Shown in pieces: positions 10,233 to 43,288 of a stretch of 64,000 bases of DNA. The DNA lies in the NCBI GenBank assembly GCA_002269645.1, contig NIVC01000010.1:1426001-1490000 (forward strand), written 5' to 3'. The notes under the pieces were generated by a model, which ran no database searches, was not told where the DNA came from, and saw only the letters and a list, made by a program, of their open reading frames with translations. The DNA is from Macrostomum lignano. Its lineage: Eukaryota. Numbering within the stretch: position 1 is the stretch's first letter; each line of letters starts with the position of its first letter. Position numbers and translations under genes: made by a program.

Positions 10233-11708
10233 TTACTTTGGTACAGGAACTCCTGTAGTATAGATGAAGTTTCTCCAGTGCCCGCCGCAGCTCTGGCGTC
10301 GGTCACCACTGCAGCCAATATTGCAGTCGGAGTCTTTGGCTATGCCGTGCTTACCCAATGAATTTCCACAGAAGCACCATTCAGATGCTTGCACTCCGGC
10401 GTACATGAATCCTTTCGATGCGCACAGATTCAGACAGAAACCCGGCGTGTTAACATTGCTTCTGTGTTCAATTGGCAGGTCTCGGTTTCTCGAGTCGATG
10501 AAACAGCCGAGTCCCTTTAGAACTGTAATTAATGCACAGTTAAAATTGCGACTATTTACCAAATTTAGTCTTGAGAAGATTCTTTTCTCAAAGTTGCACA
10601 AAGTTTGAATTTTTCTGAGTCATTGTCTGGAATCCACCATGCAAAAGCGGTGGTGCGCCAGCAAAGATGACTTAACAACTCTGTACATCGTCTTATTTAT
10701 CCTTTTCTATCAACTTTTATGGTCTTCCGTACATCTCCTGTAGTTATCACTGCATGCCATCATCAATGTTGACAGTTAACTTGGTATATGGACTAATTAA
10801 TTGATAATTAATAGCTTACCGAGTTTTCGACGTACTGTCGAATATATTTCGGTTCTTTGGGTGCCACCACAGCTCCTGCTGCTGTCTCCGCTGCACTTCG
10901 TATTGCATTCAGAATCGTCTACTTGGACGTGCTTTGTGAAAGAGTTGCCACAGAAGCACCAAGAACCCTTTTGTACGCCGGCATATAGGTATCCATGTTC
11001 CTTACAGTGCCTCTTACAGTGTTCCGGTGCATTTCCCTTGCTTCCCCGTCGAAAAGGCAGGTCCCGACTTTTAGAGACCTCTTTGAAACAGCCAATTCGT
11101 TCTGGGTCTGCAAAAAACACGCGAGTACATGCTGTGTAATGTTAACTTTGGAAAAAAACTCTTCATTGTTTGAGGTGCTGCAGTAGCAACGAGTGTTGCA
11201 ATATGTGCAGAGGCGTGTACATGTACGCTCAAAATAAGATGATGCAGTAACTAACGTATTGCAACCAGAAGGCAAAAAAGCATCCAAAAATGATGCAAAG
11301 TAATTTCTTACCTGCTTTCGGGGGTTTGCTTTCGGCCTTTGGAGGTTTGCTTTCGGATTTCGGGGGTTTGCTTTCGGCCTTTGGAGGTTTGCTTTCGGCT
11401 TTCGGGGGTTTGCTTTCGGCTTTCGGGGGTTTGCTTTCGGCTTTCGGGGGTTTGCTTTCGGCCTTTGGAGGTTTGCTTTCGGCTTTCGGGGGTTTGCTTT
11501 CGGCTTTCGGGGGTTTGCTTTCGGCTTTCGGGGGTTTGCTTTCGGCTTTCGGAGGTTTGCTTTCGGCTTTTGGTGGTTTGCTTTCGGCTTCCGAGCGTTT
11601 GCTTACTACTTTGTGAACACTGCGCTTCAGACTATGTTCACTGCTGGTGGCCACTGGGCTGCAGAAGACACTCAGCGCGATGACTAGCAGAACCAGAGCT
11701 ATCCTCAT
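10233..11708 (-). CDS. Secreted protein: signal peptide, 13x AESKPPK, two WSC domains; exons 11708-11312, 11107-10820, 10522-10233
   Basis: Signal peptide MRIALVLLVIALSVFC. Phase-1 junctions G|GTAAGA, TTTTTGCAG|AC, G|GTAAGC and TTACAG|TT keep the frame. WSC motifs IGCFKE...C...C...YAGVQKGSWCFCGN...C...CSGD...CGG and LGCFID...YAGVQASEWCFCGN...CSGD...CGG. The 3' end could instead splice at AA|GTAAGA. Confidence 0.85.
11317..11590. repeat. 21-bp coding tandem repeat (AESKPPK)x13
   Basis: GGGGTTTGCTTTCGGCTTTCG-type units inside exon 1 of the WSC gene. Confidence 0.95.
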
Positions 11709-12886
11709 TATACACTTTGCTATGATTAGGCTTAAGAGAGACAATAGAAACTTAAGAGAAGTCTGAGCTGTAAATGGTTGCGAGGAGTTACTAAATTGCT
11801 GAAAAGGAACCGAGCTCTCAAATAGCACTGCAATTTATAGCCTTTTGCGTCGAGCTGCCACATGGAAGGTAGGGAAAATGTCAATTTAATTTAATAGGAA
11901 TGCGAATTGCTGGAAATGCTGCGCGATTCTCTGCCTTCGAGCAAAGGAATTTATCAAAAAATATTCAAAAAGTAATTTAAGTTTGTGTAACTTCCTCTAA
12001 CAGCGGAACATGTCGCTTTGGTGGCTTAGCATTTTTTGAATTAAAAATTTGGTTTGTGAGTAGCTATTCGAAATTTAGGAACTTCAACTTGCCGATACTA
12101 AAAATAAGTTGTCTCTGTGTAAGTACGTCTGTTTATTTAGTGCTGCCGATAATATCGTTTGAAACAATTAAGGTGAACACTTCAGATGCAAGCAGTCCAT
12201 TTGATATTTGACGTATTGTAGGCTAATAAGTTCATGTAAATGTAGAGTGAAAGTAATTGTAGTGGCCAGACGTGTACTCGTCAATCGAATATTCTAAGAT
12301 CACGTGGGGACACGTCATTCGAAAGTGACAAGGACAGTTCTGTGGCTTCGCACAAATCTCAATAGTCTATGGCCCAAGAAAAATGGCTGGATGAGCAATC
12401 AGTTTTCCAACGGGCAATCAACTTTCCATACGATGTGGTCTACGCGCAAAAGGCTCCATAGGAAGTGGGACAGAAGTTTAACTTTGTCTATGGCTAAACT
12501 GTACCCTGAACAGTCAAGACAGTAAACATAAAGACAACCATCTCTGACTAAAGTCAGGCTTCAAATCCGCTTTCTGACTACTTGGCTGCCTTAATTTTTG
12601 TCCGTTCACCATGGCAGAGGTTCAACCTCCACAAGGTCAAAATGCAAGAATAATCTACGACAAAACGCGGAGACTCCTCATCATCCAGGTCAGCCTATGC
12701 TTGCTTGATAATCCGACAATGAGTTTCAGAACCTTAACCGTTGATTAGTTTTGTTGCAGAGTCACTTTCACGGTTCTCTGTGCTTTTGCTTCATGAAATG
12801 AAATACGATCTTTTGGATTTAAGCATACATTGCAAAGTTGATTGCCTCTATTTGAAAAACTAATTGCTCCTTCCAGCCTTTTTGGG

Positions 12887-19502: not shown

Positions 19503-21455
19503 TTAAAATTCAAAGAAAAGAAGTGCCATCTATTCCGGATAAGCCTAAATTATCTGGGACATCTAGTAACTACTGACGGCATCAAGACCGATCCGGCGAA
19601 GATTGAGGCTTTTCAAACCTGGTCAAGACCAAGGACAGCTCGACAACTTAACCTCTTTTTTGACCAAGTTTCGTCTGCACGTGCGCTTATATTAAGAGCT
19701 ATGCTAAATTTGTACCTCTCTACGCAGAATTGGCAGCTCCAATCCATGATTTCATTAAGCAGAAGACTATCAGGAACTTCAATTGTCTTTTGGGAAAAGC
19801 CCAGCAAGACGCGTTCGACCAGCTCAAGGCAGCCATGACTTCAACATCAATGCTCGCGTATCTGCAGTTCAGCGAGGAGCCCAATGTCGTCTTCATCCTG
19901 GACACGGATTGCCTCTGCGACCAGAATTGGGGCCTGTCTGAGCCAACGTCAACCGGATGGAATTGAGCGCCCTATTGGCTACTTCTCCAGAAGACTGAAG
20001 CCTGCCGAAGCCCGATATCCGATTACTAAACAAAAACTATTGGCAGTCGTAGAAGGGATGCGCTATTTTATCTTCTACCTGTTGTCCAAGAAGTTCGTCT
20101 GCCGGACCGACCATGCAGCACTGACCTGGATCCGAAAGAGAACTCAGCAAATAGGCATCTTCGGACAATGGCTACAAAACTTAGCGAACTCGAGTTCGAG
20201 ACCCTGCACCGCAAATCAGGACAGCATCAGAATGCCGACGGTCTCTCGAGAAGGCCAGAAGACGAAGCTAAATGCCTGGAGGAGGCTCAGCGAGAGGAAG
20301 CCGACGAGGACCAAAGTAAGCAGCCTGTAGCGACACCCGTGCAGCGGCGCCGAAGGTCCACGGCAGCAGCCACCCGGGCTCTCCACCAAGCAAGAAGACG
20401 TCTGTCCGCTGAAAGAGACGGAGACCGCCGGCTAGGACGAAAGGCTCCAACGGCGAGGCTACGCCGCCAGCAACCCCGACAGCCGACAGCAAGCCGCTGA
20501 CAGAGCTGCACCCGCCGGCAACGAAGCCGAGGCCGCCAGCCCGCTGTTATCATGACTCTCAAGTGTGGCCAACCCAGTTCAGTAGCACGACACGTTGCCC
20601 TACAAGGAGCCGCCGCCTACTAGCTGGAGACGACAAGGGCAGCGACCGATGTGCAGCCCGAGACGACAGCTGCCAACCTGCTTGCAGTGCTAAGTTCAAG
20701 AAGAGAGTGAGGTTCAGCAGCGACGCCTACAGCTCCTGCTCCTCATCATCCGCTGACGAAGCTAATGCGAGTGTAGCGACGCCGAAGCCCCCGAGGAGAA
20801 TCGACCTTCGGGCACATCAGCACCACGGCAACCGGTCTAATTAGCGACTATGAGGAGGGAGCTCCAGGCCCCGAGTAAAGCCGCCATAGCCGACGCCGCA
20901 CCGACTCGCTCAGCCGAAAGACACTGAACAATGAATTTGACCGACCCCATCCCGAGGCCAGTCACTCGCGAGGAGCTCCAGACGCATCAGCGTGCTGACT
21001 CTGCCATCGCCATGGTGATCGACTTACATGTACTAGAAAGCGGATAACCCAAGCCACCGCTTGCGCAGCGACTAAATAAGACGAGAGATGAACGAAATCT
21101 CCTGGCATTCTACGACCAACTCGAAGTCCGAGACGACGGTGTGCTAGTAGTACACCTAGACGAGGCCGACGACGAAGGAACAGCGCGGATCGTCCTGCCG
21201 AAGAGTCTCGACGCCACAGTGTTCACCATGGACCGCATTACTGCGGACACGTACATGGGCCGAGATCTCACCACAGCTATAAGTGTGCGAAAGGTTCTGG
21301 CGACATGCCCTAGCTATAGAAGCGTCCGACTATGTCGCTTCCTGCCAGACCTACACTCAGAGCAAAGGACGGCGACGAGTTCCGGCGCATGTACAGTCGT
21401 TTCCGGTCTACGAAATTAATGGGCGATGTGCAATTGACATCCTAGGTCCCACTGG
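19503..21455 (+). mobile_element. Decayed Gypsy/Ty3 pol fragment (end of RT, RNase H, integrase zinc finger), copy A
   Basis: LKFKEKKCHLF..LNYLGHLVTTDGIKTDPAKIEA, IGYFSRRLKPAEARYPITKQKLLAVVEGMRYF, CRTDHAAL and ERFWRHALA..ASDYVASCQTY. Many frameshifts; clearly homologous to 29390-31370. Confidence 0.9.
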
Positions 21456-35172: not shown

Positions 35173-38100
35173 ATGTCTGCTACATTGCTGCGCCTCTCAG
35201 CCAATGCCGCGACACTTGCCCGGCATCTACCCGTATATGGTCGCTGTTTGACCAATTCCGCTGTATTGACAGCTTCTCCTAGCATTAGACCTACCTGGCA
35301 ATTAGGCAAGACTCGATTTTCTTCCATCGCCGCTCTCTACAACAATCGCCGACCATTGTCAACAACCTCGTCATCAGCTTCATCAGCACCGGAGCCTGAT
35401 CCAGACTATCACAGCATCATCAGCAATGCCGAGCGAAGTCGCGGCTCATCGGAGCGACACACCTTTCAAGCGGAAACTCGCCAATTATTAGACATTGTTG
35501 CCAAGTCATTGTACAGCGATAGGCACGTGTTTGTTCGCGAATTAGTGTCCAACGCTAGCGATGCTTTGGAGAAGCTGCGCCATTTGAGATTGTCCTCGGC
35601 GGCTGACAGCAACCAGCAGTTTGGTCCGCTAGAGATTCACCTGCAAACTGATGAGGATAAACGGACTCTAACTATACAGGACACCGGTATTGGCATGACG
35701 CGAGATGAAGCCGTGTCTAATTTAGGCACTATAGCAAGGTCTGGCAGTCAAGAGTTTATCAAGCAGGCAGCATCGGGCTCCGGAGGTCAGACTGCCTCCG
35801 CCTCTGTGATTGGCCAATTTGGCGTTGGCTTCTATGCCTCGTTTATGGTGGCCGATAAAATTGACGTCTACAGCCAGAGCAGCTGTCAGGCCGATGCTAA
35901 ACCTGTCAAGTGGAGTTCAGATGGATTGGGGAGCTATGAGGTTGGTGTGATTGGCCTAGCTTAGCAGTGATCCAAAGTATGCGGCTTTGTTTTATGGCAT
36001 TGTGCTGCTCACGACTCTAAATTGGCGCTCAAGTCTCACCTATGAGCCTCAATTGGCGCTCAAGTCTCACCTATGCGCCACAATTGGCGCTCAAGTCTCA
36101 CCTATGCGCCACAATTGGCGCTCAAGTCTCACCTATGCGCCTCAATTGGCGCTCAAATCTCACCTATGAGCCTCAATTGGCGCTCAAGTCTCACCTATGA
36201 GCCACAGTTGGCGCTCAAGTCTCCCTATGGGGCTAAATTGGCGCTCAAGTCACCTATGAGCCTCAATTGGCGCTCAGATCTCACCTATGAGCCTCAATTG
36301 GCGCTCAAGTCTCACCTATGGGGCTAAATTGGCGCTCAAGTCACCTATGAGCCTCAATTGGCGCTCAAGTCACCTATGGGGCTAAATTGGCGCTCAAGTC
36401 ACCTATGAGCCTCAATTGGCGCTCAGATCTCACCTATGAGCTTCAATTGGCGCTTAAGTCTCACTTAGGAAGCTAATTAAAACATCTCCATTGTCTTTTT
36501 CATAAATAAGCAAGTGATGCTACTCTCCAATCCTGCACAGGTTTCAGAGGCCGAGAACGTCAGCCCAGGCACCAAGATAGTGCTACACCTGAAGCCTGAC
36601 GCTCTGGAATTTGCTAAAGACGAGAATTTGCGCACTATTGTGCAGCGCTACAGCGGCTTCGTTGCGGCCCCAATCTTTGTTAATGGACGGCGGGTGAATC
36701 CTGCGGAGCCATTGTGGCTTAAGGATGCCAGCAAAGTGACGCAAGAGGAGCACCAAGAGTTTTATAGGCTCGTATCCGGGGCCTATGATGCGCCTAGGTA
36801 ATCCAGATGTTCTTTTAGAGTGCTCATTTCTCTACTGCTAATATCTAGACATTTAAATTTGATCATAAAATCTGTCGCTTTATCTACCCATAGAATCGCC
36901 CTTATCTACCCATAGAATCGCCCTTATCTAACCATAGAATCGCCCTTATCTAACCATAGAATCGCCCTTATCTACCAATAGAATCGCCCTTATCTACCCA
37001 TAGAATCGCCCTTATCTACCCATAGAATCGCCCTTATCTACTCATAGAATCTCCATTATCTAACCATAGAATCGGCCTTATCTACTCATAGAATTTCCCT
37101 TATCTAACCATAGAATCGCCCTTATCTAACCATAGAATCGCCCTTATCTACTCATAGCATCGCCCTTATCTACTCATAGAATCGCCCTTATCTACCAATA
37201 GAATCGGCCTTATCTACCCATAGAATCGCCCTTATCTACCCATAGAATCGCCCTTCTACCCATAGAATCGGCCTTATCTACCCATAGAATCGGCCTTATC
37301 TACCCATAGCATCGCCCTTATCTACCCATAGCATCGCCCTTATCTACCCATAGCATCGCCCTTATCTACCCATAGCATCGCCCTTATCTACCCATAGCAT
37401 CGCCCTACCATCATAGGTGCTCTAGGCTGCTGTAGTAATCAATCACCGCCATTAACCTACTGACCCAGGTACGTGTTCTCCTACAAGACGGACGCTCCTC
37501 TGAACCTCCGCGCCCTGCTGTACATCCCGGAGTCCAAGCCGGCCCTATGGGAGATGAGTCGAGACTCGGAGTCAGGCGTGGCTCTCTACTCCAAACGAGT
37601 GTTGGTGCTGCCCAAAGCTCAGCCGCTTCTACCAAGATGGCTGCGATTTCTCAAAGGCGTTGTGGACTCGGAAGATGTACCGCTAAACCTTAGCAGGGAG
37701 CTGCTACAGGACAGCAGGCTTATTAGAAGGATTAACCTGGCACTAACTGGGCGGGTTATTCGGTTTCTTAGCGAGCAGGCTAAAAAAGATGCTGAGAAGT
37801 GAGTCAGTTAACGGCTGTTAATGCTTATGAGGGCTCAAAAGCTTCCAATTATTTAAGAATCGCCCATGAAGCACACTGAGAATCGCCCCTGAAGCACACT
37901 GAGAATCGCCCCTGAAGCACACTGGCAATCGCCCATGAAGCACACTGAGAACCGCCCCTGAAGCACACTGAGAATCGCCCCTGAAGCACACTGAGAATCG
38001 CCCCTGAAGCACACTGGCAATCGCCCGTGAAGCTCACTGAGGATCGTCCCTGAAGCACACTGAGAATCGCCCCTGAAGCACACTGAGAATCGCCCCTGAA

Positions 38101-40688
38101 GCACACTGAGAGTCGCCCCTGAAGCACAATGAGAATCGCCCCTGAAGCACACTGAGAGTCGCCCCTGAAGCACAATGAGAATCGCCCCCAAAGCACACTG
38201 AGAATCGCCCCTGAAGCACACTGAGAATCGCCCCTGAAGCACACTGAGAGTCGCCCCTGAAGCACAATGAGAATCGCCCCTGAAGCACAATGAGAATCGC
38301 CCCTGAAGCACAATGAGAATCGCCCCCAAAGCACACTGAGAATCGCCCCTGAAGCACACTTAGAATCGCCCCTGAAGCTCACTGAGAATCGCCCCCGCAG
38401 GTACGCCGGCTTCCACCGCGACTTCGGCTTATTCCTCAAAGAAGGCATCGTCACCACTCAGGACCAGGCTGAGAGAGAGAAAATCGCTGACTTATTGAGA
38501 TTCGAAACCTCTGCCCAGCAACCGGGCCAGCTAACTTCCCTATCAGAATACGTGGCCCGCCAGGACGCCAGCTCGCGTAATATTCTGTTCCTTAGCGCTC
38601 CCAGCCGGCAGCTGGCGGAGACTTCGCCCTACCTTGAGGCGGTTCGCCATCGCAATCTGGAAGTAATTTTCCTGTACGAACCCTACGACGAATTGGTGCT
38701 GATGCAGTTGGGCCAATTTGCCGGCAAGCAGTTGCAATCTGTTGAGAATGAAGCGTCAAGATCTGCTAGCGATGATGATAATGCCAGCAAAGATGAGGCA
38801 AGCACCAAACCGGATGCTGATAGCGAACAGCAAGACAGTGCTGGGGACAATCGTTTATCTGAACGCGACGCCAACGATCTGTCCTCGTTTATGACTACAG
38901 CTCTAGCTGGCCGAGTGAAATTAGTGAAGCCGACTAATCGGCTGACTAATCATCCTTGCGTTGTGTGTATTAAAGATCTGGGCGCTGTTAGACACCTGCT
39001 TAGGACTACTATGCACGATAGGTGAGTTGGGTAGGGCAGTAGGTTTCATGGTAGGTTTGGGTATCTTAGTAGGTTTCATGGTTTGTTAAGGGTAGGGTAG
39101 TAGGTTTAATGGTAGGTTTTGGTAGTAGGTTTCATGGCAGGTTAGGGTGGTAGTTTTCATGGTAGGTTAGGGTAGTAGGTTTCATGGTAGGTTAGAGTAG
39201 TAGGTTAGGGTAGTAGGTTTCATGGTAGGTTTCATGGCAGGTTAGGGTAGTAGGTTTCATGGCAGGTTATGGTAGTAGGTTAGGGTAGTAGGTTTCATGG
39301 TAGGTTAGGGTAGTAGGTTAGGGTAGTAGGTTTCATGGTAGGTTAGGGTAGTAGGTTTCATGGTAGGTTAGGGTAGTAGGTTAGGGTAGTAGGTTTCATG
39401 GTAGGTTAGGGTAGTAGGTTTCATGGTAGGTTAGGGTAGTAGGTTTCATGGTAGGTTAGGGTAGTAGGTTTCATGGTAGGTTAGGGTGGTAGGTTTCATG
39501 GTAGGTTAGGGTGGTAGTTTTCATGGTATGTTAGGGTAGTAGATTTCATGGTAGGTTAGGGTGGTAGTTTTCATGGTAGGTTAGGGTAGTAGGTTTCATG
39601 GTAGGTTAGGGTGGTAGTTTTCATGGTATGTTAGGGTGGTAGTTGTCATGGTATGTTAGGGTAGTAGATTTCATGGTAGGTTAGGGTGGTAGTTTTCATG
39701 GTAGGTTAGGGTAGTAGGTTTCATGGTAGGTTAGGGTAGTAGGTTTCATGGTAGGTTAGGGTGGTAGGTTTCATGGTAGGTTAGGGTGGTAGGTTTCATG
39801 GTAGGTTAGGGTGGTAGTTTTCATGGTATGTTAGGGTAGTAGATTTCATGGTAGGTTAGGGTGGTAGTTTTCATGGTAGGTTAGGGTAGTAGGTTTCATG
39901 GTAGGTTAGGGTAGTAGGTTTCATGGTAGGTTAGGGTAGTAGGTTTCATGGTAGGTTAGGGTGGTAGGTTTCATGGTAGGTTAGGGTGGTAGTTTTCATG
40001 GTATGTTAGGGTAGTAGATTTCATGGTAGGTTAGGGTGGTAGGTTTCATGGTAGGTTAGGGTAGTAGGTTTCATGGTAGGTTAGGGTAGTAGGTTTCATG
40101 GTAGGTTAGGGTAGTAGGTTTCATGGTAGGTTAGGGTGGTAGGTTTCATGGTAGGTTAGGGTAGTAGGTTTCATGGTATGTTAGGGTAGTAGATTTCATG
40201 GTAGGTTAGGGTAGTAGGTTTCATGGTAGGTTAGGGTAGTAGATTTCATGGTAGGATAATATTATTAGAGTGTTGGAGAGAATAGTATGCTATTATGAAT
40301 ACAGTTTCTACTACCGTAGGCCTATTAGCTAAACTGTCTATTTACTAGCGAAATGTTTTTATTTCTACTTACAGTAGGCTGTCAGCGCAAAGCGCCGTAT
40401 CTTTATTCTAAATATAATACGTAACAATAAAAATTTAATCTGCAATTCCATGCTAGGCCAGCCGAGGAGCGCCTTCGCCTGATGGAGCCGGTGCTGGAGA
40501 TCAACGCTAAGCACCCGCTAATCCGCAAGCTGTCAATCATGCGAACGGCCGATCCGGATCTGGCTAAATTATTCGCTCTGCAGTTGTGCGACAATGCGCT
40601 CACCATTGCCGGGGTGCTGGAAGACCCCAGGGCGATGATCGATCGGTTGAACGAGTTGCTAACGAAAGCGGCGGAGAAGATGCCTTGA
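35173..40688 (+). CDS. TRAP1: Mitochondrial HSP90 (TRAP1/HSP75); exons 35173-35940, 36541-36797, 37469-37798, 38401-39021, 40457-40688
   Basis: Arg/Ser-rich transit peptide, [74 protein letters not shown] and [10 protein letters not shown]. All junctions are GT-AG and in frame. Confidence 0.96.
36020..36465. repeat. About 31-bp minisatellite (AATTGGCGCTCAAGTCTCACCTATGAGCCTC) in TRAP1 intron 1
   Basis: About 14 copies with 29-31 bp variants. Confidence 0.92.
36880..37410. repeat. 22-bp minisatellite (AGAATCGCCCTTATCTACCCAT) in TRAP1 intron 2
   Basis: About 24 copies. Confidence 0.93.
37855..38400. repeat. 23-bp minisatellite (GAGAATCGCCCCTGAAGCACACT) in TRAP1 intron 3, running into the 3' splice site
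   Basis: About 23 copies; the last unit reads GAGAATCGCCCCCGCAG|exon. Confidence 0.93.
39035..40255. repeat. 25-bp G/T-rich minisatellite (GGTAGGTTAGGGTAGTAGGTTTCAT) in TRAP1 intron 4
   Basis: About 48 copies; most units contain TTAGGG. Confidence 0.95.
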
Positions 40689-40704
40689 CTTTATTGCTGT
40701 TTGA

Positions 40705-41230
40705 CTTGAGAGGGTAGAGTGGTAGACAGGAGGGTAGAGCGGAACACAGGAGGGTAGAGCGGTAGACAGGAGGGAAGAGCGGAAGACAGGAGGGTAGAGC
40801 GGTAGACAGGAGGGTAGAGCGGAAGACAGGAGGGTAGAGTGGTAGACAGGAGGGTAGAGCGGAACACAGGAGGGTAGAGCGGTAGACAGGAGGGAAGAGC
40901 GGAAGACAGGAGGGTAGAGCGGTAGACAGGAGGGTAGAGCGATAGACAGGAGGGTAGAGCGGTCGACAGGAGGGTAGAGTGGTAGACAGGAGGGTAGAAC
41001 GGTAGACAGGAGGGTAGAGTGGTAGACAGGAGGGTAGAGCGGAAGACAGGAGGGTAGAGCGATAGACAGGAGGGTAGAGCGGTCGACAGGAGGGTAGAAT
41101 GGTAGACAGGAGGGTAGGGTGGTAGACAGGAGGGTAGAGTCGTAGACAGGAGGGTAGAGCGGTAGTCAAGAGGGTAGAGCGGTAGTCAAGAGGGTAGAGC
41201 GGTAGACAGGTGGGTGGTAGAGCGGTAGAC
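40705..41230. repeat. 20-bp purine-rich minisatellite (GAGGGTAGAGCGGTAGACAG) just after the TRAP1 stop
   Basis: About 26 copies. Confidence 0.95.
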
Positions 41231-41633
41231 GCAAGAACAATGTGTTTACATGCGGCAGCAATTAAGATTATTTGAGCAACTTTGATAACTCTTTACACCA
41301 GCTATATTTGAGAAGTCATGAAAAGCTTAACTAGCTGATATATGATTAGTGTATTTGCTTCTTATCTTGCAATGTTGCACTGACTGTAACTACATAATTT
41401 AATTCTTGAACAACAATTAAGGAAAATTGCTTTTTAACCAGCTTTTTGTCTGAGAATAATTAATTCAGCATTTTGTGGACAAGATACATATTGCTCTAGT
41501 AAGTTTCACATATTACTGCTTGTTAGTTTGAATTGAAAATACAACTGTGTTTTATTAGGAAAAAATATTACACCTGTTGTAGTTGTTATGACGAACAAAC
41601 CAATTTATTTGGATATTCGATATAAAAGTACCT

Positions 41634-42186
41634 GTTGCCATAGCAACCACATATTTTAACATACTATCTAAATTCTTATTATGATCATAATCTCAGTTCT
41701 CATAGCAACCAGGCACATTCATATAGCTAGTCTCAATTATAATTCCTGTTGCCATAGCAACCAAACACATTCATATATTAGCCAGTCTCAATCAGAATGC
41801 CAGTTGCCATGGCAACCAAACATTCATATAGCTAGTCTCAATAATTATCCCAGTTGCCATAGCAGCCAAACACATTCATGTAGCTAGTCCGAATAATTAT
41901 CCCAGTTGCCATAGCAGCCAAACACATTCATGTAGCTAGTCCGAATAATAATCCCTGTTGCCATAGAAACCAAACACATTCATATATGGCTAGTCTCATT
42001 CACAACTCCAGTTGCCATAGCAACCAAACACATTCATATATGGCTGGTCTCAATAATAATCTCTGTTACCATAGCAACCAAACACATTCATATATGGCTA
42101 GTCTCAATAATAATCTCTGCTACCATAGCAACCAAACACATTCATATATGGCTAGTCTCATTCACAACTCCAGTTGCCATGACAAC
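41634..42186. promoter_or_regulatory. About 52-54 bp tandem array, each unit carrying an RFX X-box-like motif (GTTGCCATRGCAAC); 11 motifs
   Basis: Motifs start at 41634, 41696, 41748, 41803 (perfect palindrome GTTGCCATGGCAAC), 41853, 41905, 41957, 42011, 42065, 42119 and 42173. TATAAAAG sits at 41621. Regulatory function is inferred. Confidence 0.6.
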
Positions 42187-43288
42187 CAAACGCGGCCTAT
42201 TCGTAGTCCTCGAAGGCATGGACCGGGCCGGCAAGTCCTCGCAGTGCCGCCGGCTTGTGGATCACCTAAACAGCATCGGGCATCGAACCGAGCTCATGCG
42301 ATTCCCCGAGCGCGACTCGGCCATCGGCAGCCTGATTGGCCAGTATCTGGGCAGGAAAATCGAACTTGACGATCACGCCGTCCACCTGCTGTTCTCGGCC
42401 AATCGCTGGGAGTTTCGGCCGCATATCTTGGACACCCTGGCCAGTGGAGTTAACATTGTGTGCGACAGATATGCATACAGCGGCATTGCCTTCACCGCCG
42501 CCAAGGCTGATGGCCCCGACTTTCACTGGTGCTGCCAGCCCGAGGTGGGCCTGCCCGCTCCCGACCTCAAGGTTAGATCTGGGCAGATGGGATCAGGGAG
42601 TTGGGATATGGGATCAGGGATTGGGGAGATGAAATCAGCGAGTGGGGAAGATGGGATCAGGGAGTGGGGATATGGGATCAGGGATTGGGGAGATGAAATC
42701 AGCGAGTGGGGAAGATGGGATCAGGGAGTGGGGATATGGGATTAGGCAGTGGGAGATGGGATCAGGGAGTGGGAATATGGGATCAGTGATTGGGGAATAT
42801 GGGATCAGTGATTGGGGAAGATGAGATCAGGGATTGGGGAGATGGGATCAGGGATTGGGGAGATGGGATCAGGGAGTGGGAAGATGGGATCAGGGATCGT
42901 AGGAGATGGGATCAGGGATCGTGAGAGATGGGATCAGATAGTGGGGAGATGGAAACATGGAATAGGACAGATCCCCACCATCTTGCAGATCTTCCTGTCT
43001 GTGAGCCCCGAGGCGCAGGCAAGTCGCGGCGGCTTCGGAGCCGAGCGCTACGAAGTGGCGGACTTCCAGCGACGGGTCGGCGAGGCCTACGCCAGACTGA
43101 TGCGGCTGGAGGACCAGGCGGGCGGCTCCTGCCCTGCCTGGCTCACCATCAACGCCGACGGCGCCTTCGAAGAGGTGCAGCAGCAGCTGGCCAAGGCCGT
43201 GGTTGCCGCCATCGACTGTCCGCGCTCTGCCGGTCCGCCCGCTGGCCTGCGGTTTCCGGCTGCCGGTGGCCGAGGCTGCGAGGCCTGA
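42179..43288 (+). CDS. DTYMK: Thymidylate (dTMP) kinase; exons 42179-42571 and 42989-43288
   Basis: RGLFVVLEGMDRAGKSSQ (P-loop), RFPERDSAIG, HLLFSANRWE, CDRYAYSGIAF, GLPAPDL and FGAERYE. Junctions AAG|GTTAGA and TTGCAG|ATC. Confidence 0.95.
42585..42950. repeat. Irregular GATGGGATCAGGGA-based repeat filling the DTYMK intron
   Basis: Direct reading. Confidence 0.85.

What the first reader, a model, noticed from the sequence alone, without database searches (positions are those of the whole stretch)
41621..42190. Array of 11 RFX X-box-like motifs whose last copy contains the DTYMK start codon
Seen: a ~52-54 bp tandem unit, each with GTT(G/A)CCATRG(C/A)A(A/G)C or a close variant, including one perfect palindrome GTTGCCATGGCAAC. 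TATAAAAG precedes the array. The final unit reads GTTGCC-ATG-ACA-ACC-AAA, so the start codon and first codons of dTMP kinase are the repeat unit itself. Known: GTNRCC(N0-3)RGYAAC is the RFX site; RFX drives animal ciliogenesis genes, and yeast Rfx1/Crt1 represses RNR genes through X-boxes. Inference: one X-box at the ATG was amplified into a homotypic array with about five-helical-turn spacing, possibly placing a dNTP-pathway gene under RFX control or acting as an RFX sink.
Basis: partly seen in the sequence, partly recalled or inferred. Interest (0 to 1): 0.78.

Follow-up and report, generated by a model that had tools for sequence, protein, structure and literature searches.

The report
X-box-bearing minisatellite before flatworm dTMP kinase
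The 11-copy repeat is real and each copy looks like an RFX binding site, but it is most likely an ordinary minisatellite in a repeat-saturated flatworm genome, lying in RNA that trans-splicing removes just before the dTMP kinase start codon.

Summary
There are eleven ~54-bp tandem units at 41634-42191. Each carries GTTGCCATAGCAAC or a close variant. One is the perfect palindrome (41803-41816), and the last contains the dTMP kinase ATG (42179).

The window is Macrostomum lignano (Mlig_3_7, NIVC01000010.1). Three things change the picture.

1. Tandem arrays cover 26.7% of the window, and nearly every intron, UTR and spacer nearby has one.
2. The public annotation starts the DTYMK CDS 3 nt after the AG inside the last unit (ccAG|TTGCC ATG). 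It names TRAP1 and DTYMK as g1 and g2 of one transcriptional unit. The ten upstream units are therefore outron or intercistronic sequence that spliced-leader trans-splicing discards.
3. Three further assembly copies of the locus carry the same array with unit gain and loss. The X-box columns are no better conserved than the adjacent spacer. The 263 bp upstream of the array (CCAAT, TATA) is conserved like an exon.

The X-box match is excellent: 8 of 11 units here and 10 of 11 in the paralogues fit the nematode consensus. RFX binding is therefore plausible but untested.

Best reading: a locus-specific minisatellite that copied the acceptor and start-codon module. RFX control remains a minority possibility. 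Interest is low to moderate.

The parts
40456..40688 (+). Last coding exon and stop codon of the upstream same-strand gene TRAP1/HSP75 (BOX15_Mlig021008g1)
   Evidence: Sequence. Gene call L004 140-5655 equals window 35173-40688, with Pfam HSP90. Name.
40710..41230 (+). 20-bp minisatellite (26 copies) in the TRAP1 3' UTR / intercistronic spacer
   Evidence: TRF. It is also present in the paralogues.
41371..41633 (+). Unique AT-rich block just upstream of the array, conserved like an exon between paralogues. It contains TTTGAA (41527-41532), CCAAT (41600-41604) and TATAAAAG (41621-41628). Candidate internal promoter or intercistronic control region.
   Evidence: 2/263 differences from L002, against 59/1386 in other unique non-coding sequence; Fisher p = 0.0036. 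Motifs were read.
41634..42191 (+). The array: 11 tandem units of 50-62 bp, each starting with an X-box-like 14-mer. Unit 1 is degenerate. Units 5 and 6 are a recent duplicate. Units 7-10 show a two-unit higher-order pattern.
41803..41816 (.). Unit 4: perfect palindrome GTTGCCATGGCAAC. It is the only upstream unit that keeps an ATG.
42172..42173 (+). AG of the SL trans-splice acceptor (CTCCAG fits YTNCAG). The mature mRNA would be SL + TTGCC + AUG.
   Evidence: The annotated 5'-partial CDS starts at 42176, the first in-frame codon after 42174. In the paralogues it starts at the G of the AG. Acceptor motif and SL sequence come from PMC8629364.
42173..42186 (+). Unit 11: GTTGCCATGACAAC. It holds the last base of the acceptor, the 5-nt leader, the start codon and codons 2-3.
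42179..42571 (+). DTYMK coding exon 1 (131 codons)
42572..42988 (+). DTYMK intron, almost entirely a 21-bp minisatellite (42580-42952)
42989..43288 (+). DTYMK coding exon 2 and stop codon
41986..42369 (+). 127-codon ORF in another frame. It runs through units 7-11 and across the DTYMK start. It would act as an inhibitory overlapping uORF on any RNA that kept upstream units.

Best explanation
This is a locus-specific minisatellite (VNTR) of Macrostomum lignano. It was made by repeated tandem duplication of a ~54-bp segment. That segment spans the 3' end of the DTYMK outron, the SL trans-splice acceptor, the 5-nt leader, the start codon and the first four codons. Only the last unit is used: the spliced leader is joined behind its AG, and translation starts 5 nt later. 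The ten upstream units lie in the TRAP1-DTYMK intercistronic or outron region and are discarded from the mRNA. The X-box-like palindrome was part of the duplicated segment and was copied passively. The array is probably neutral or nearly so. This fits a genome where tandem repeats fill introns and operon spacers. The actual control region is more likely the conserved 263 bp (CCAAT, TATA) upstream of the array, or the TRAP1 promoter. Shown here: the array, its boundaries, its presence and turnover in paralogues, the annotated mRNA start, and the lack of motif-specific conservation. Inferred: trans-splicing at this AG (from the annotation and literature, not from reads seen here), operon membership, and neutrality.
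For: (1) The organism is M. lignano Mlig_3_7, and 15% of that genome is simple or tandem repeat (PMC5730564). In this window 28 arrays cover 26.7%. Every intron and spacer from TRAP1 to the innexin has one. (2) The annotated DTYMK CDS is 5'-partial and starts at window 42176 (GCC ATG...), 3 nt behind the AG at 42172-73. In three other copies it starts at the G of that AG. The neighbouring innexin model likewise starts 1 nt behind a TAG. The annotation pipeline cuts transcripts at SL sites, and the acceptor motif is YTNCAG. (3) TRAP1 and DTYMK share a transcriptional-unit prefix in both lineages: Mlig021008g1/g2 and Mlig002182g40/g41. The stop-to-acceptor distance is 1485 bp, of which about 1040 bp is tandem repeat. 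The repeat-adjusted distance is therefore below the 1-kb operon criterion of PMC8629364, whose authors attribute such spacers to neutral repeat accumulation. (4) The paralogues L002, L003 and L007 carry the same array. Units 1-5 are collinear, but the proximal half is reshuffled by unit gain and loss. All other arrays of the interval are shared too. (5) Divergence from the unit consensus is 7.1% and 4.8% in the 14 motif columns, against 6.4% and 5.8% in the next 28 spacer columns. Motif substitutions hit critical positions. (6) The unit was found at no other place in the 64-kb window or the fetched loci.
Against: The unit consensus is 13/14 identical to the optimal RFX palindrome, and 8-10 of 11 units satisfy a 14-bp consensus that occurs nowhere else in the window. 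By my calculation with uniform base composition, such a near-perfect site straddling a start codon is expected in only about 0.36 genes per genome (34/4^11 x 44,328 genes). It is the longest palindrome among the 25 array consensus units of the window. Units 1-5 differ by only 2% between paralogues, against 3-7% for other non-coding sequence. RFX proteins have a known link to dNTP-synthesis genes in yeast. Neutrality is inferred from weak tests: few and non-independent units, and only about 1-5% paralogue divergence.
Confidence: 0.6

Rival explanations
1. The array is a functional homotypic cluster of RFX sites. An RFX factor binds the 8-10 consensus X-boxes and represses or activates an internal DTYMK promoter. 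The first X-box lies between the TATA box and the expected start site. This would tie a dNTP-pathway gene to RFX, as with yeast Crt1/Rfx1 and the RNR genes.
For: The consensus matches are excellent and are confined to the array. A TATA box and a CCAAT box lie in an exon-like conserved block immediately upstream. Promoters with several X-boxes are known, and the yeast RNR precedent exists (PMC3245922). All four assembly copies keep at least 8 consensus sites.
Against: The motif is no better conserved than the adjacent spacer. Critical positions are mutated in 3 of 11 units. The proximal units turn over freely. DTYMK is annotated as a downstream gene of a TRAP1 transcriptional unit. All neighbouring neutral-looking arrays are equally shared by the paralogues. 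No paper links RFX to thymidylate kinase or to Macrostomum regulation.
Confidence: 0.2
2. The array acts at the RNA level. It supplies decoy trans-splice acceptors and upstream AUGs. Upstream units fold into a small hairpin that starts at the acceptor G, while the last unit does not. This would steer SL addition to the productive site or tune the yield of translatable mRNA.
For: Six of 11 units have an AG in front of TTGCC. The hairpin is -5.0 kcal/mol (z = -4.5) in upstream units, against -1.9 kcal/mol (z = +0.7) in the last unit. RNAs spliced at upstream units would carry a 127-codon ORF overlapping the DTYMK start.
Against: The hairpins are marginal, and the whole outron folds only slightly better than shuffles (z = -2.2). 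Most upstream acceptors do not fit YTNCAG. Nothing shows that they are used. The same features follow automatically from copying the acceptor and ATG module.
Confidence: 0.08
3. The unit belongs to a dispersed satellite or a transposon-borne repeat family that happened to land next to DTYMK.
For: The genome is repeat-rich, and an LTR retrotransposon lies in the window. A whole-genome search could not be run.
Against: No other copy exists in 64 kb or in the fetched loci outside the orthologous site. The repeat runs 13 nt into a conserved CDS, so at least the last unit is native to the gene. A peptide search with the array ORF against 1.84 billion proteins found only unrelated repeats. There is no tRNA or Rfam similarity.
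Confidence: 0.05

Closest known systems
Promoter-proximal or intragenic minisatellites (VNTRs) whose units carry a transcription-factor motif, e.g. human MNS16A with GATA-1 sites (PMC5438627, listed)
   Same: Head-to-tail units of tens of bp. Each unit holds one factor-binding consensus. Copy arrangement varies between copies of the locus.
   Different: Here the last unit supplies the trans-splice acceptor and the start codon. The array lies in RNA that is discarded. No effect on expression has been shown.
Repeat-inflated intercistronic and outron spacers of M. lignano operons (PMC8629364)
   Same: A same-strand upstream gene, an SL trans-spliced downstream gene, and a spacer that falls below 1 kb once tandem repeats are subtracted. 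The authors propose neutral repeat accumulation.
   Different: That paper does not describe this locus, a repeat that includes the acceptor and ATG, or any X-box content.
Multiple X-box promoters: yeast Crt1/Rfx1 at RNR2, RNR3 and RNR4; human RFX1/3 at two X-boxes in MAP1A exon 1; C. elegans F25B4.2 (PMC3245922)
   Same: Several X-boxes of differing quality close to the start of one gene. The yeast targets are dNTP-synthesis genes.
   Different: Those cases have 2-3 non-repetitive sites with demonstrated binding and effect. Here there are 11 sites made by recent tandem duplication and there are no binding data.
DAF-19/RFX X-boxes of nematode ciliary genes (consensus GTHNYY AT RRNAAC, quoted in bioRxiv 10.1101/2020.08.21.260547)
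   Same: A 14-bp palindrome with an AT spacer, within 500 bp upstream of the ATG of a trans-spliced gene.
   Different: Those are single sites, in ciliary genes, conserved across species. DTYMK is not a ciliary gene.

Membership tests
Functional RFX X-box element | Sequence fits the X-box consensus (GTNRCC N0-3 RGYAAC / GTHNYY AT RRNAAC) | tested here: met
   5 of 11 units fit the strict pattern and 8 of 11 the nematode pattern. 10 of 11 fit in the paralogues. Unit 4 is the perfect palindrome.
Functional RFX X-box element | Lies within the promoter-proximal region (validated nematode sites are less than 500 bp upstream of the ATG) | tested here: inconclusive
   The sites lie 0-545 bp upstream of the ATG. 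However, the gene is annotated as the downstream gene of a transcriptional unit, and the true start site is unknown.
Functional RFX X-box element | The motif is conserved beyond its flanks | tested here: not met
   Motif columns diverge by 7.1% and 4.8%, against 6.4% and 5.8% for the adjacent spacer. Critical bases are mutated in 3 units. Power is low.
Functional RFX X-box element | RFX protein binds the site and target expression depends on RFX | not testable with these tools
   This needs EMSA, DAP-seq or ChIP, plus RNAi. No paper on this was found.
Minisatellite / VNTR | Head-to-tail units of 10-100 bp at one locus | tested here: met
   TRF period 54, 9.5-11 copies.
Minisatellite / VNTR | Unit number or order varies between copies of the locus, and the edge units are degenerate | tested here: met
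   The window duplicates unit 5. Lineage B has an extra pair and a 46-bp unit. Unit 1 has decayed.
Minisatellite / VNTR | Restricted to one locus and not dispersed | tested here: inconclusive
   No copy elsewhere in 64 kb or the fetched loci, and no related predicted proteins. The whole genome was not searchable.
SL trans-spliced outron / operon spacer of M. lignano | Acceptor YTNCAG at the 5' end of the mRNA model | tested here: met
   CTCCAG ends at 42173. The CDS model starts at 42176, and at the G of the AG in three other copies. Motif.
SL trans-spliced outron / operon spacer of M. lignano | SL-containing reads map to the acceptor | not testable with these tools
   This rests on the annotation pipeline described in PMC5730564. 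No reads were seen here.
SL trans-spliced outron / operon spacer of M. lignano | Same-strand upstream gene at a repeat-adjusted distance below 1 kb, and a shared transcriptional-unit name | tested here: met
   1485 bp minus about 1040 bp of arrays. Names are Mlig021008g1/g2 and Mlig002182g40/g41.

The most novel reading that the evidence does not exclude
An RFX factor of a flatworm binds a naturally amplified array of 8-10 consensus X-boxes lying between a TATA box and the trans-splice acceptor of dTMP kinase, and uses it to gate dTTP supply in proliferating cells (neoblasts and germline). This would show that the fungal RFX-dNTP link (Crt1 and RNR) also operates in an animal, and that a minisatellite can build a homotypic enhancer or silencer inside an outron.
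Probability: 0.15. Interest if true: 0.6.

Novelty: new member of a known kind. Interest (0 to 1): 0.3.

Why it matters
If the array is only a neutral minisatellite, its value is illustrative. It shows how M. lignano's rampant tandem duplication can copy a trans-splice acceptor plus start codon without harming the gene, because only the last copy is used and the rest is discarded as outron. It is also a caution that perfect-looking transcription-factor arrays can arise passively. If RFX does act on it, this would be a natural 11-site X-box cluster on a nucleotide-synthesis gene in an animal where transgenesis is available. That would make the old question of an RFX link to DNA synthesis outside fungi directly testable.

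Tried and rejected
1. DTYMK and TRAP1 protein searches for paralogues returned nothing closer than 54% identity. The M. lignano entries sit in one 90% cluster whose representative is TRAP1, joined by a fused old gene model. The loci were reached through the innexin neighbour instead.
3. I tested whether the unit derives from the spliced-leader sequence (AGTCTCAAT against AGACTCAAT, TTGCCATG against TTGCATG). The local alignment score is no better than shuffles, p = 0.36. Rejected.
4. The array-ORF peptide search against 1.84 billion representative proteins gave only unrelated repetitive proteins.
5. Rfam and tRNA scans of the region found nothing.
6. Literature searches for RFX with Macrostomum, RFX with thymidylate kinase, and DTYMK in Macrostomum found nothing relevant.
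7. Presence of the array in paralogues was considered as evidence of function. I rejected this because every neighbouring array is shared as well.
8. An assembly artefact is rejected: four contigs carry the array.

Full report
**1. Observation**

Tandem Repeats Finder reports an array at 41687-42191 with period 54, 9.5 copies and 84% matches.

A search for GTTGCCATAGCAAC with up to 2 mismatches finds 11 sites on the + strand. They start at 41634, 41696, 41748, 41803, 41853, 41905, 41957, 42011, 42065, 42119 and 42173, with spacings of 50-62 bp. Only one unrelated site lies elsewhere, at 23785. Shuffles of the whole window give 0.58 matches.

- Five units fit GTNRCCNNRGYAAC.
- Eight units fit the nematode consensus GTHNYYATRRNAAC, which occurs nowhere else in the 64 kb (0.18 expected). 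The consensus is quoted in bioRxiv 10.1101/2020.08.21.260547.
- Unit 4 (41803-41816) is the perfect palindrome.
- TATAAAAG is at 41621-41628.
- Unit 11 is GTTGCC ATG ACA ACC AAA C, with the ATG at 42179.

The gene has two coding exons, 42179-42571 and 42989-43288. Its intron is filled by a 21-bp minisatellite. It encodes a 230-aa thymidylate kinase (PF02223, E = 2e-40). The N-terminus aligns with animal homologues a few residues before the P-loop strand. The start codon is therefore credible, and the repeat does run 13 nt into the CDS.

**2. Where the window comes from**

A single-exon MFS gene of the window is on record in GCA_002269645.1, contig NIVC01000010.1. NIVC is the Mlig_3_7 assembly of the free-living flatworm Macrostomum lignano (PMC5730564).

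That paper reports three relevant facts:
- 15% of the genome is simple or tandem repeat.
- The assembly holds extensive near-identical duplicated blocks.

In this window, 28 arrays with TRF score of at least 200 cover 26.7% of the sequence. Between TRAP1 and the innexin gene, every intron, 3' UTR and spacer holds one. An array in the 1.5-kb TRAP1-DTYMK spacer is therefore the rule, not an exception.

**3. The mRNA starts inside the last unit**

The public gene calls were recovered through the neighbouring innexin.

- In the window's own record the DTYMK CDS is '5'-partial' and begins at window 42176 (GCC ATG...; 231 aa, PAA94462.1). This is the first in-frame codon of a transcript starting at 42174, directly behind the AG at 42172-42173.
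- In three other copies the call begins at the G of that AG (232 aa, 'VAMTTK...'). This is the 1-nt ambiguity expected because the spliced leader itself ends in G.
- The innexin model likewise begins one base behind a TAG.

The annotation pipeline cuts transcripts at mapped SL sites. The published acceptor motif is YTNCAG, and the SL is CGGTCTCTTACTGCGAAGACTCAATTTATTGCATG (PMC8629364). The last unit has CTCCAG.

The left X-box half-site GTTGCC is therefore the last acceptor base plus the 5-nt leader. The mature mRNA is inferred to read SL-UUGCC-AUG. The ten upstream units are not in the mRNA. I did not see the reads myself, so this step rests on the annotation.

**4. Operon context**

TRAP1 ends at 40688 on the same strand. 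GenBank names TRAP1 and DTYMK Mlig021008g1 and g2 in the window. In the other lineage they are Mlig002182g40 and g41. In this nomenclature the prefix marks a transcriptional unit (or a cluster of units), and the g-numbers mark the genes cut out of it. The innexin has a different prefix.

Of the 1485 bp between the TRAP1 stop and the DTYMK acceptor, about 1040 bp are two tandem arrays. The repeat-adjusted distance is therefore below the 1-kb operon criterion of PMC8629364. Its authors explicitly ascribe inflated operon spacers to neutral repeat accumulation.

**5. Paralogues**

Three further contigs carry the TRAP1-DTYMK-innexin block: NIVC01000199.1, NIVC01003210.1 and NIVC01001800.1 (loci L002/L005, L003/L006, L007). 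They are nearly identical to each other and form lineage B. They differ from the window (lineage A) as follows:

| Region | Divergence, window vs L002 |
|---|---|
| Coding exons | about 1% |
| Unique non-coding sequence | 3-7% (59/1386) |
| 263 bp upstream of the array (41371-41633) | 2/263 (Fisher p = 0.0036) |
| Array units 1-5 | 2% |

- All copies have the array. Units 1-5 are collinear and only 2% diverged.
- The proximal half is reorganised. The window duplicated unit 5. Lineage B has an additional pair and a 46-bp unit. Both lineages happen to total 11 units.
- Lineage B has 10 of 11 consensus X-boxes.
- All other arrays of the interval are also shared, so sharing alone does not indicate function.
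- The exon-like conserved block at 41371-41633 holds TTTGAA, CCAAT and the TATA box. It is the better candidate for a regulatory element, either an internal promoter or an intercistronic signal.

**6. Is the motif itself constrained?**

Units 2-10 were aligned and compared with the unit consensus.

| Columns | Window | Lineage B |
|---|---|---|
| 14 motif columns | 7.1% | 4.8% |
| Next 28 spacer columns | 6.4% | 5.8% |
| 13 bp before the next motif | about 20% | about 24% |

The substitutions inside the motif include AAC to AGC (units 5 and 6), GT to GC (unit 10) and CC to TC (unit 2). All three hit positions fixed in both consensus patterns. I see no motif-specific constraint. The test is weak, because the units are few and related by descent.

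**7. How surprising is the X-box?**

- Among the consensus units of 25 arrays in the window, this one has the longest palindrome (6 of 7 pairs over 14 bp). Two others have 5 of 6 pairs over 12 bp.
- By my own calculation with uniform base composition, a 14-mer within one mismatch of GTTGCCATGGCAAC, with its ATG on a start codon, has probability 34/4^11 = 8.1e-6 per gene. That is about 0.36 genes among the 44,328 non-redundant genes (gene number).
- The degenerate consensus would be met at about 4 start codons per genome.

One such case turning up in a genome-wide scan is therefore unusual but not beyond chance. Once it lies in a duplication-prone genome, an 11-fold 'homotypic cluster' follows automatically.

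**8. Mechanism**

Best explanation (confidence about 0.6): a neutral or nearly neutral VNTR that copied the acceptor, leader, ATG and first codons.
- Upstream copies have ATA in place of the ATG, except unit 4.
- Only the last unit is used.
- The array merely lengthens the outron or intercistronic spacer by about 0.5 kb.

Rival A (about 0.2): RFX binds the array and regulates an internal promoter.
- Unit 1 sits between the TATA box and the expected start site.
- There is a yeast precedent: RNR2-4 are repressed through strong plus weak X-boxes. Human MAP1A has two X-boxes in exon 1, and C. elegans F25B4.2 has two (PMC3245922).

Rival B (about 0.08): an RNA-level role.
- Upstream units form a 5-bp hairpin starting at the acceptor G (-5.0 kcal/mol, z = -4.5). 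The last unit does not (-1.9 kcal/mol).
- RNAs spliced upstream would carry a 127-codon ORF overlapping the start.
- The whole outron folds only marginally better than shuffles (z = -2.2).

Rival C (about 0.05): a dispersed satellite. No support was found, but a whole-genome search was not possible.

**9. Comparison with known systems, and novelty**

As a structure this is a member of a known kind: a minisatellite near a gene start whose units contain a transcription-factor consensus. It lies in the repeat-inflated operon spacers already described for this species. It resembles multi-X-box promoters in sequence only. The defining functional features of an RFX element (binding, and RFX-dependent expression) are untested, and the conservation criterion was not met.

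The specific locus is not described in the literature searched. Neither is the overlap of X-box, trans-splice acceptor and start codon.

**10. Verdict**

- Observation: confirmed.
- Interpretation: partly supported. Amplification of a unit containing the ATG is supported. RFX control is unproven and disfavoured by context.
- Interest: 0.3.
- Most novel reading not excluded: a real RFX-dNTP link in a flatworm, probability about 0.15.

Noticed in passing
window 42139-42186 (mature mRNA inferred): After SL addition, the SL's terminal AUG opens a 3-codon uORF (AUG UUG CCA UGA). Its stop overlaps the DTYMK start codon as AUGA. This is a termination-reinitiation-like arrangement and could be chance.
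   Followed up: partly
window 40688-40710 vs L002 4231-4450: Lineage B has about 220 bp of unique TRAP1 3' UTR, including AATAAATAAAAAA, between the stop codon and the 20-bp minisatellite. In the window this segment is missing and the array starts 20 bp after the stop. The TRAP1 poly(A) site of the window copy is therefore unclear.
   Followed up: no
window 41371-41633: The 263 bp upstream of the array are as conserved between paralogues as the exons (2/263). They carry TTTGAA (a CHR-like element), CCAAT and TATAAAAG, an element set typical of cell-cycle gene promoters. The motif reading is from memory and was not tested.
   Followed up: partly
whole window: 28 tandem arrays (periods 4-81 bp) cover 26.7% of the window. 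Nearly every intron and UTR of TRAP1, DTYMK and the innexin has its own unrelated array. All are shared with the paralogues at different copy numbers.
   Followed up: partly
window 25513-25646: Two strict X-box consensus matches (GTCACCGAAGTAAC, minus strand) lie inside an unrelated 15-bp minisatellite. This is another case where a repeat multiplies a chance consensus match.
   Followed up: no
window 29327-34132 (-) and 19884-20500 (+): LTR-retrotransposon pol remnants. Pfam finds the integrase zinc domain, RVT_1 and RT RNase H. A second RT/RNase H-like fragment lies near 20 kb (by eye).
   Followed up: partly
window 52490-53176 (-): A Sox-type HMG-box gene (PF00505, 6.7e-25). A 21-bp minisatellite (52446-52686) runs into the end of its open reading frame.
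   Followed up: no
window 11229-11828 (-): An ORF with a signal-peptide-like start. Its body is a 21-bp array translated as (KPPKAES)n. It may be a minisatellite-encoded secreted repeat protein.
   Followed up: no
protein database, cluster of P0355: M. lignano DTYMK (230-232 aa) and TRAP1 (735-738 aa) sit in one 90%-identity cluster. A fused gene model from the older assembly (P0358, 971 aa) bridges them. That is why homology searches with either protein returned no Macrostomum hit.
   Followed up: yes
window 23785-23798 (-): The only X-box-like 14-mer outside the array is GTTCCCATAGCAGC, 2 mismatches from the unit motif. It lies in a GC-rich stretch of unknown function.
   Followed up: no
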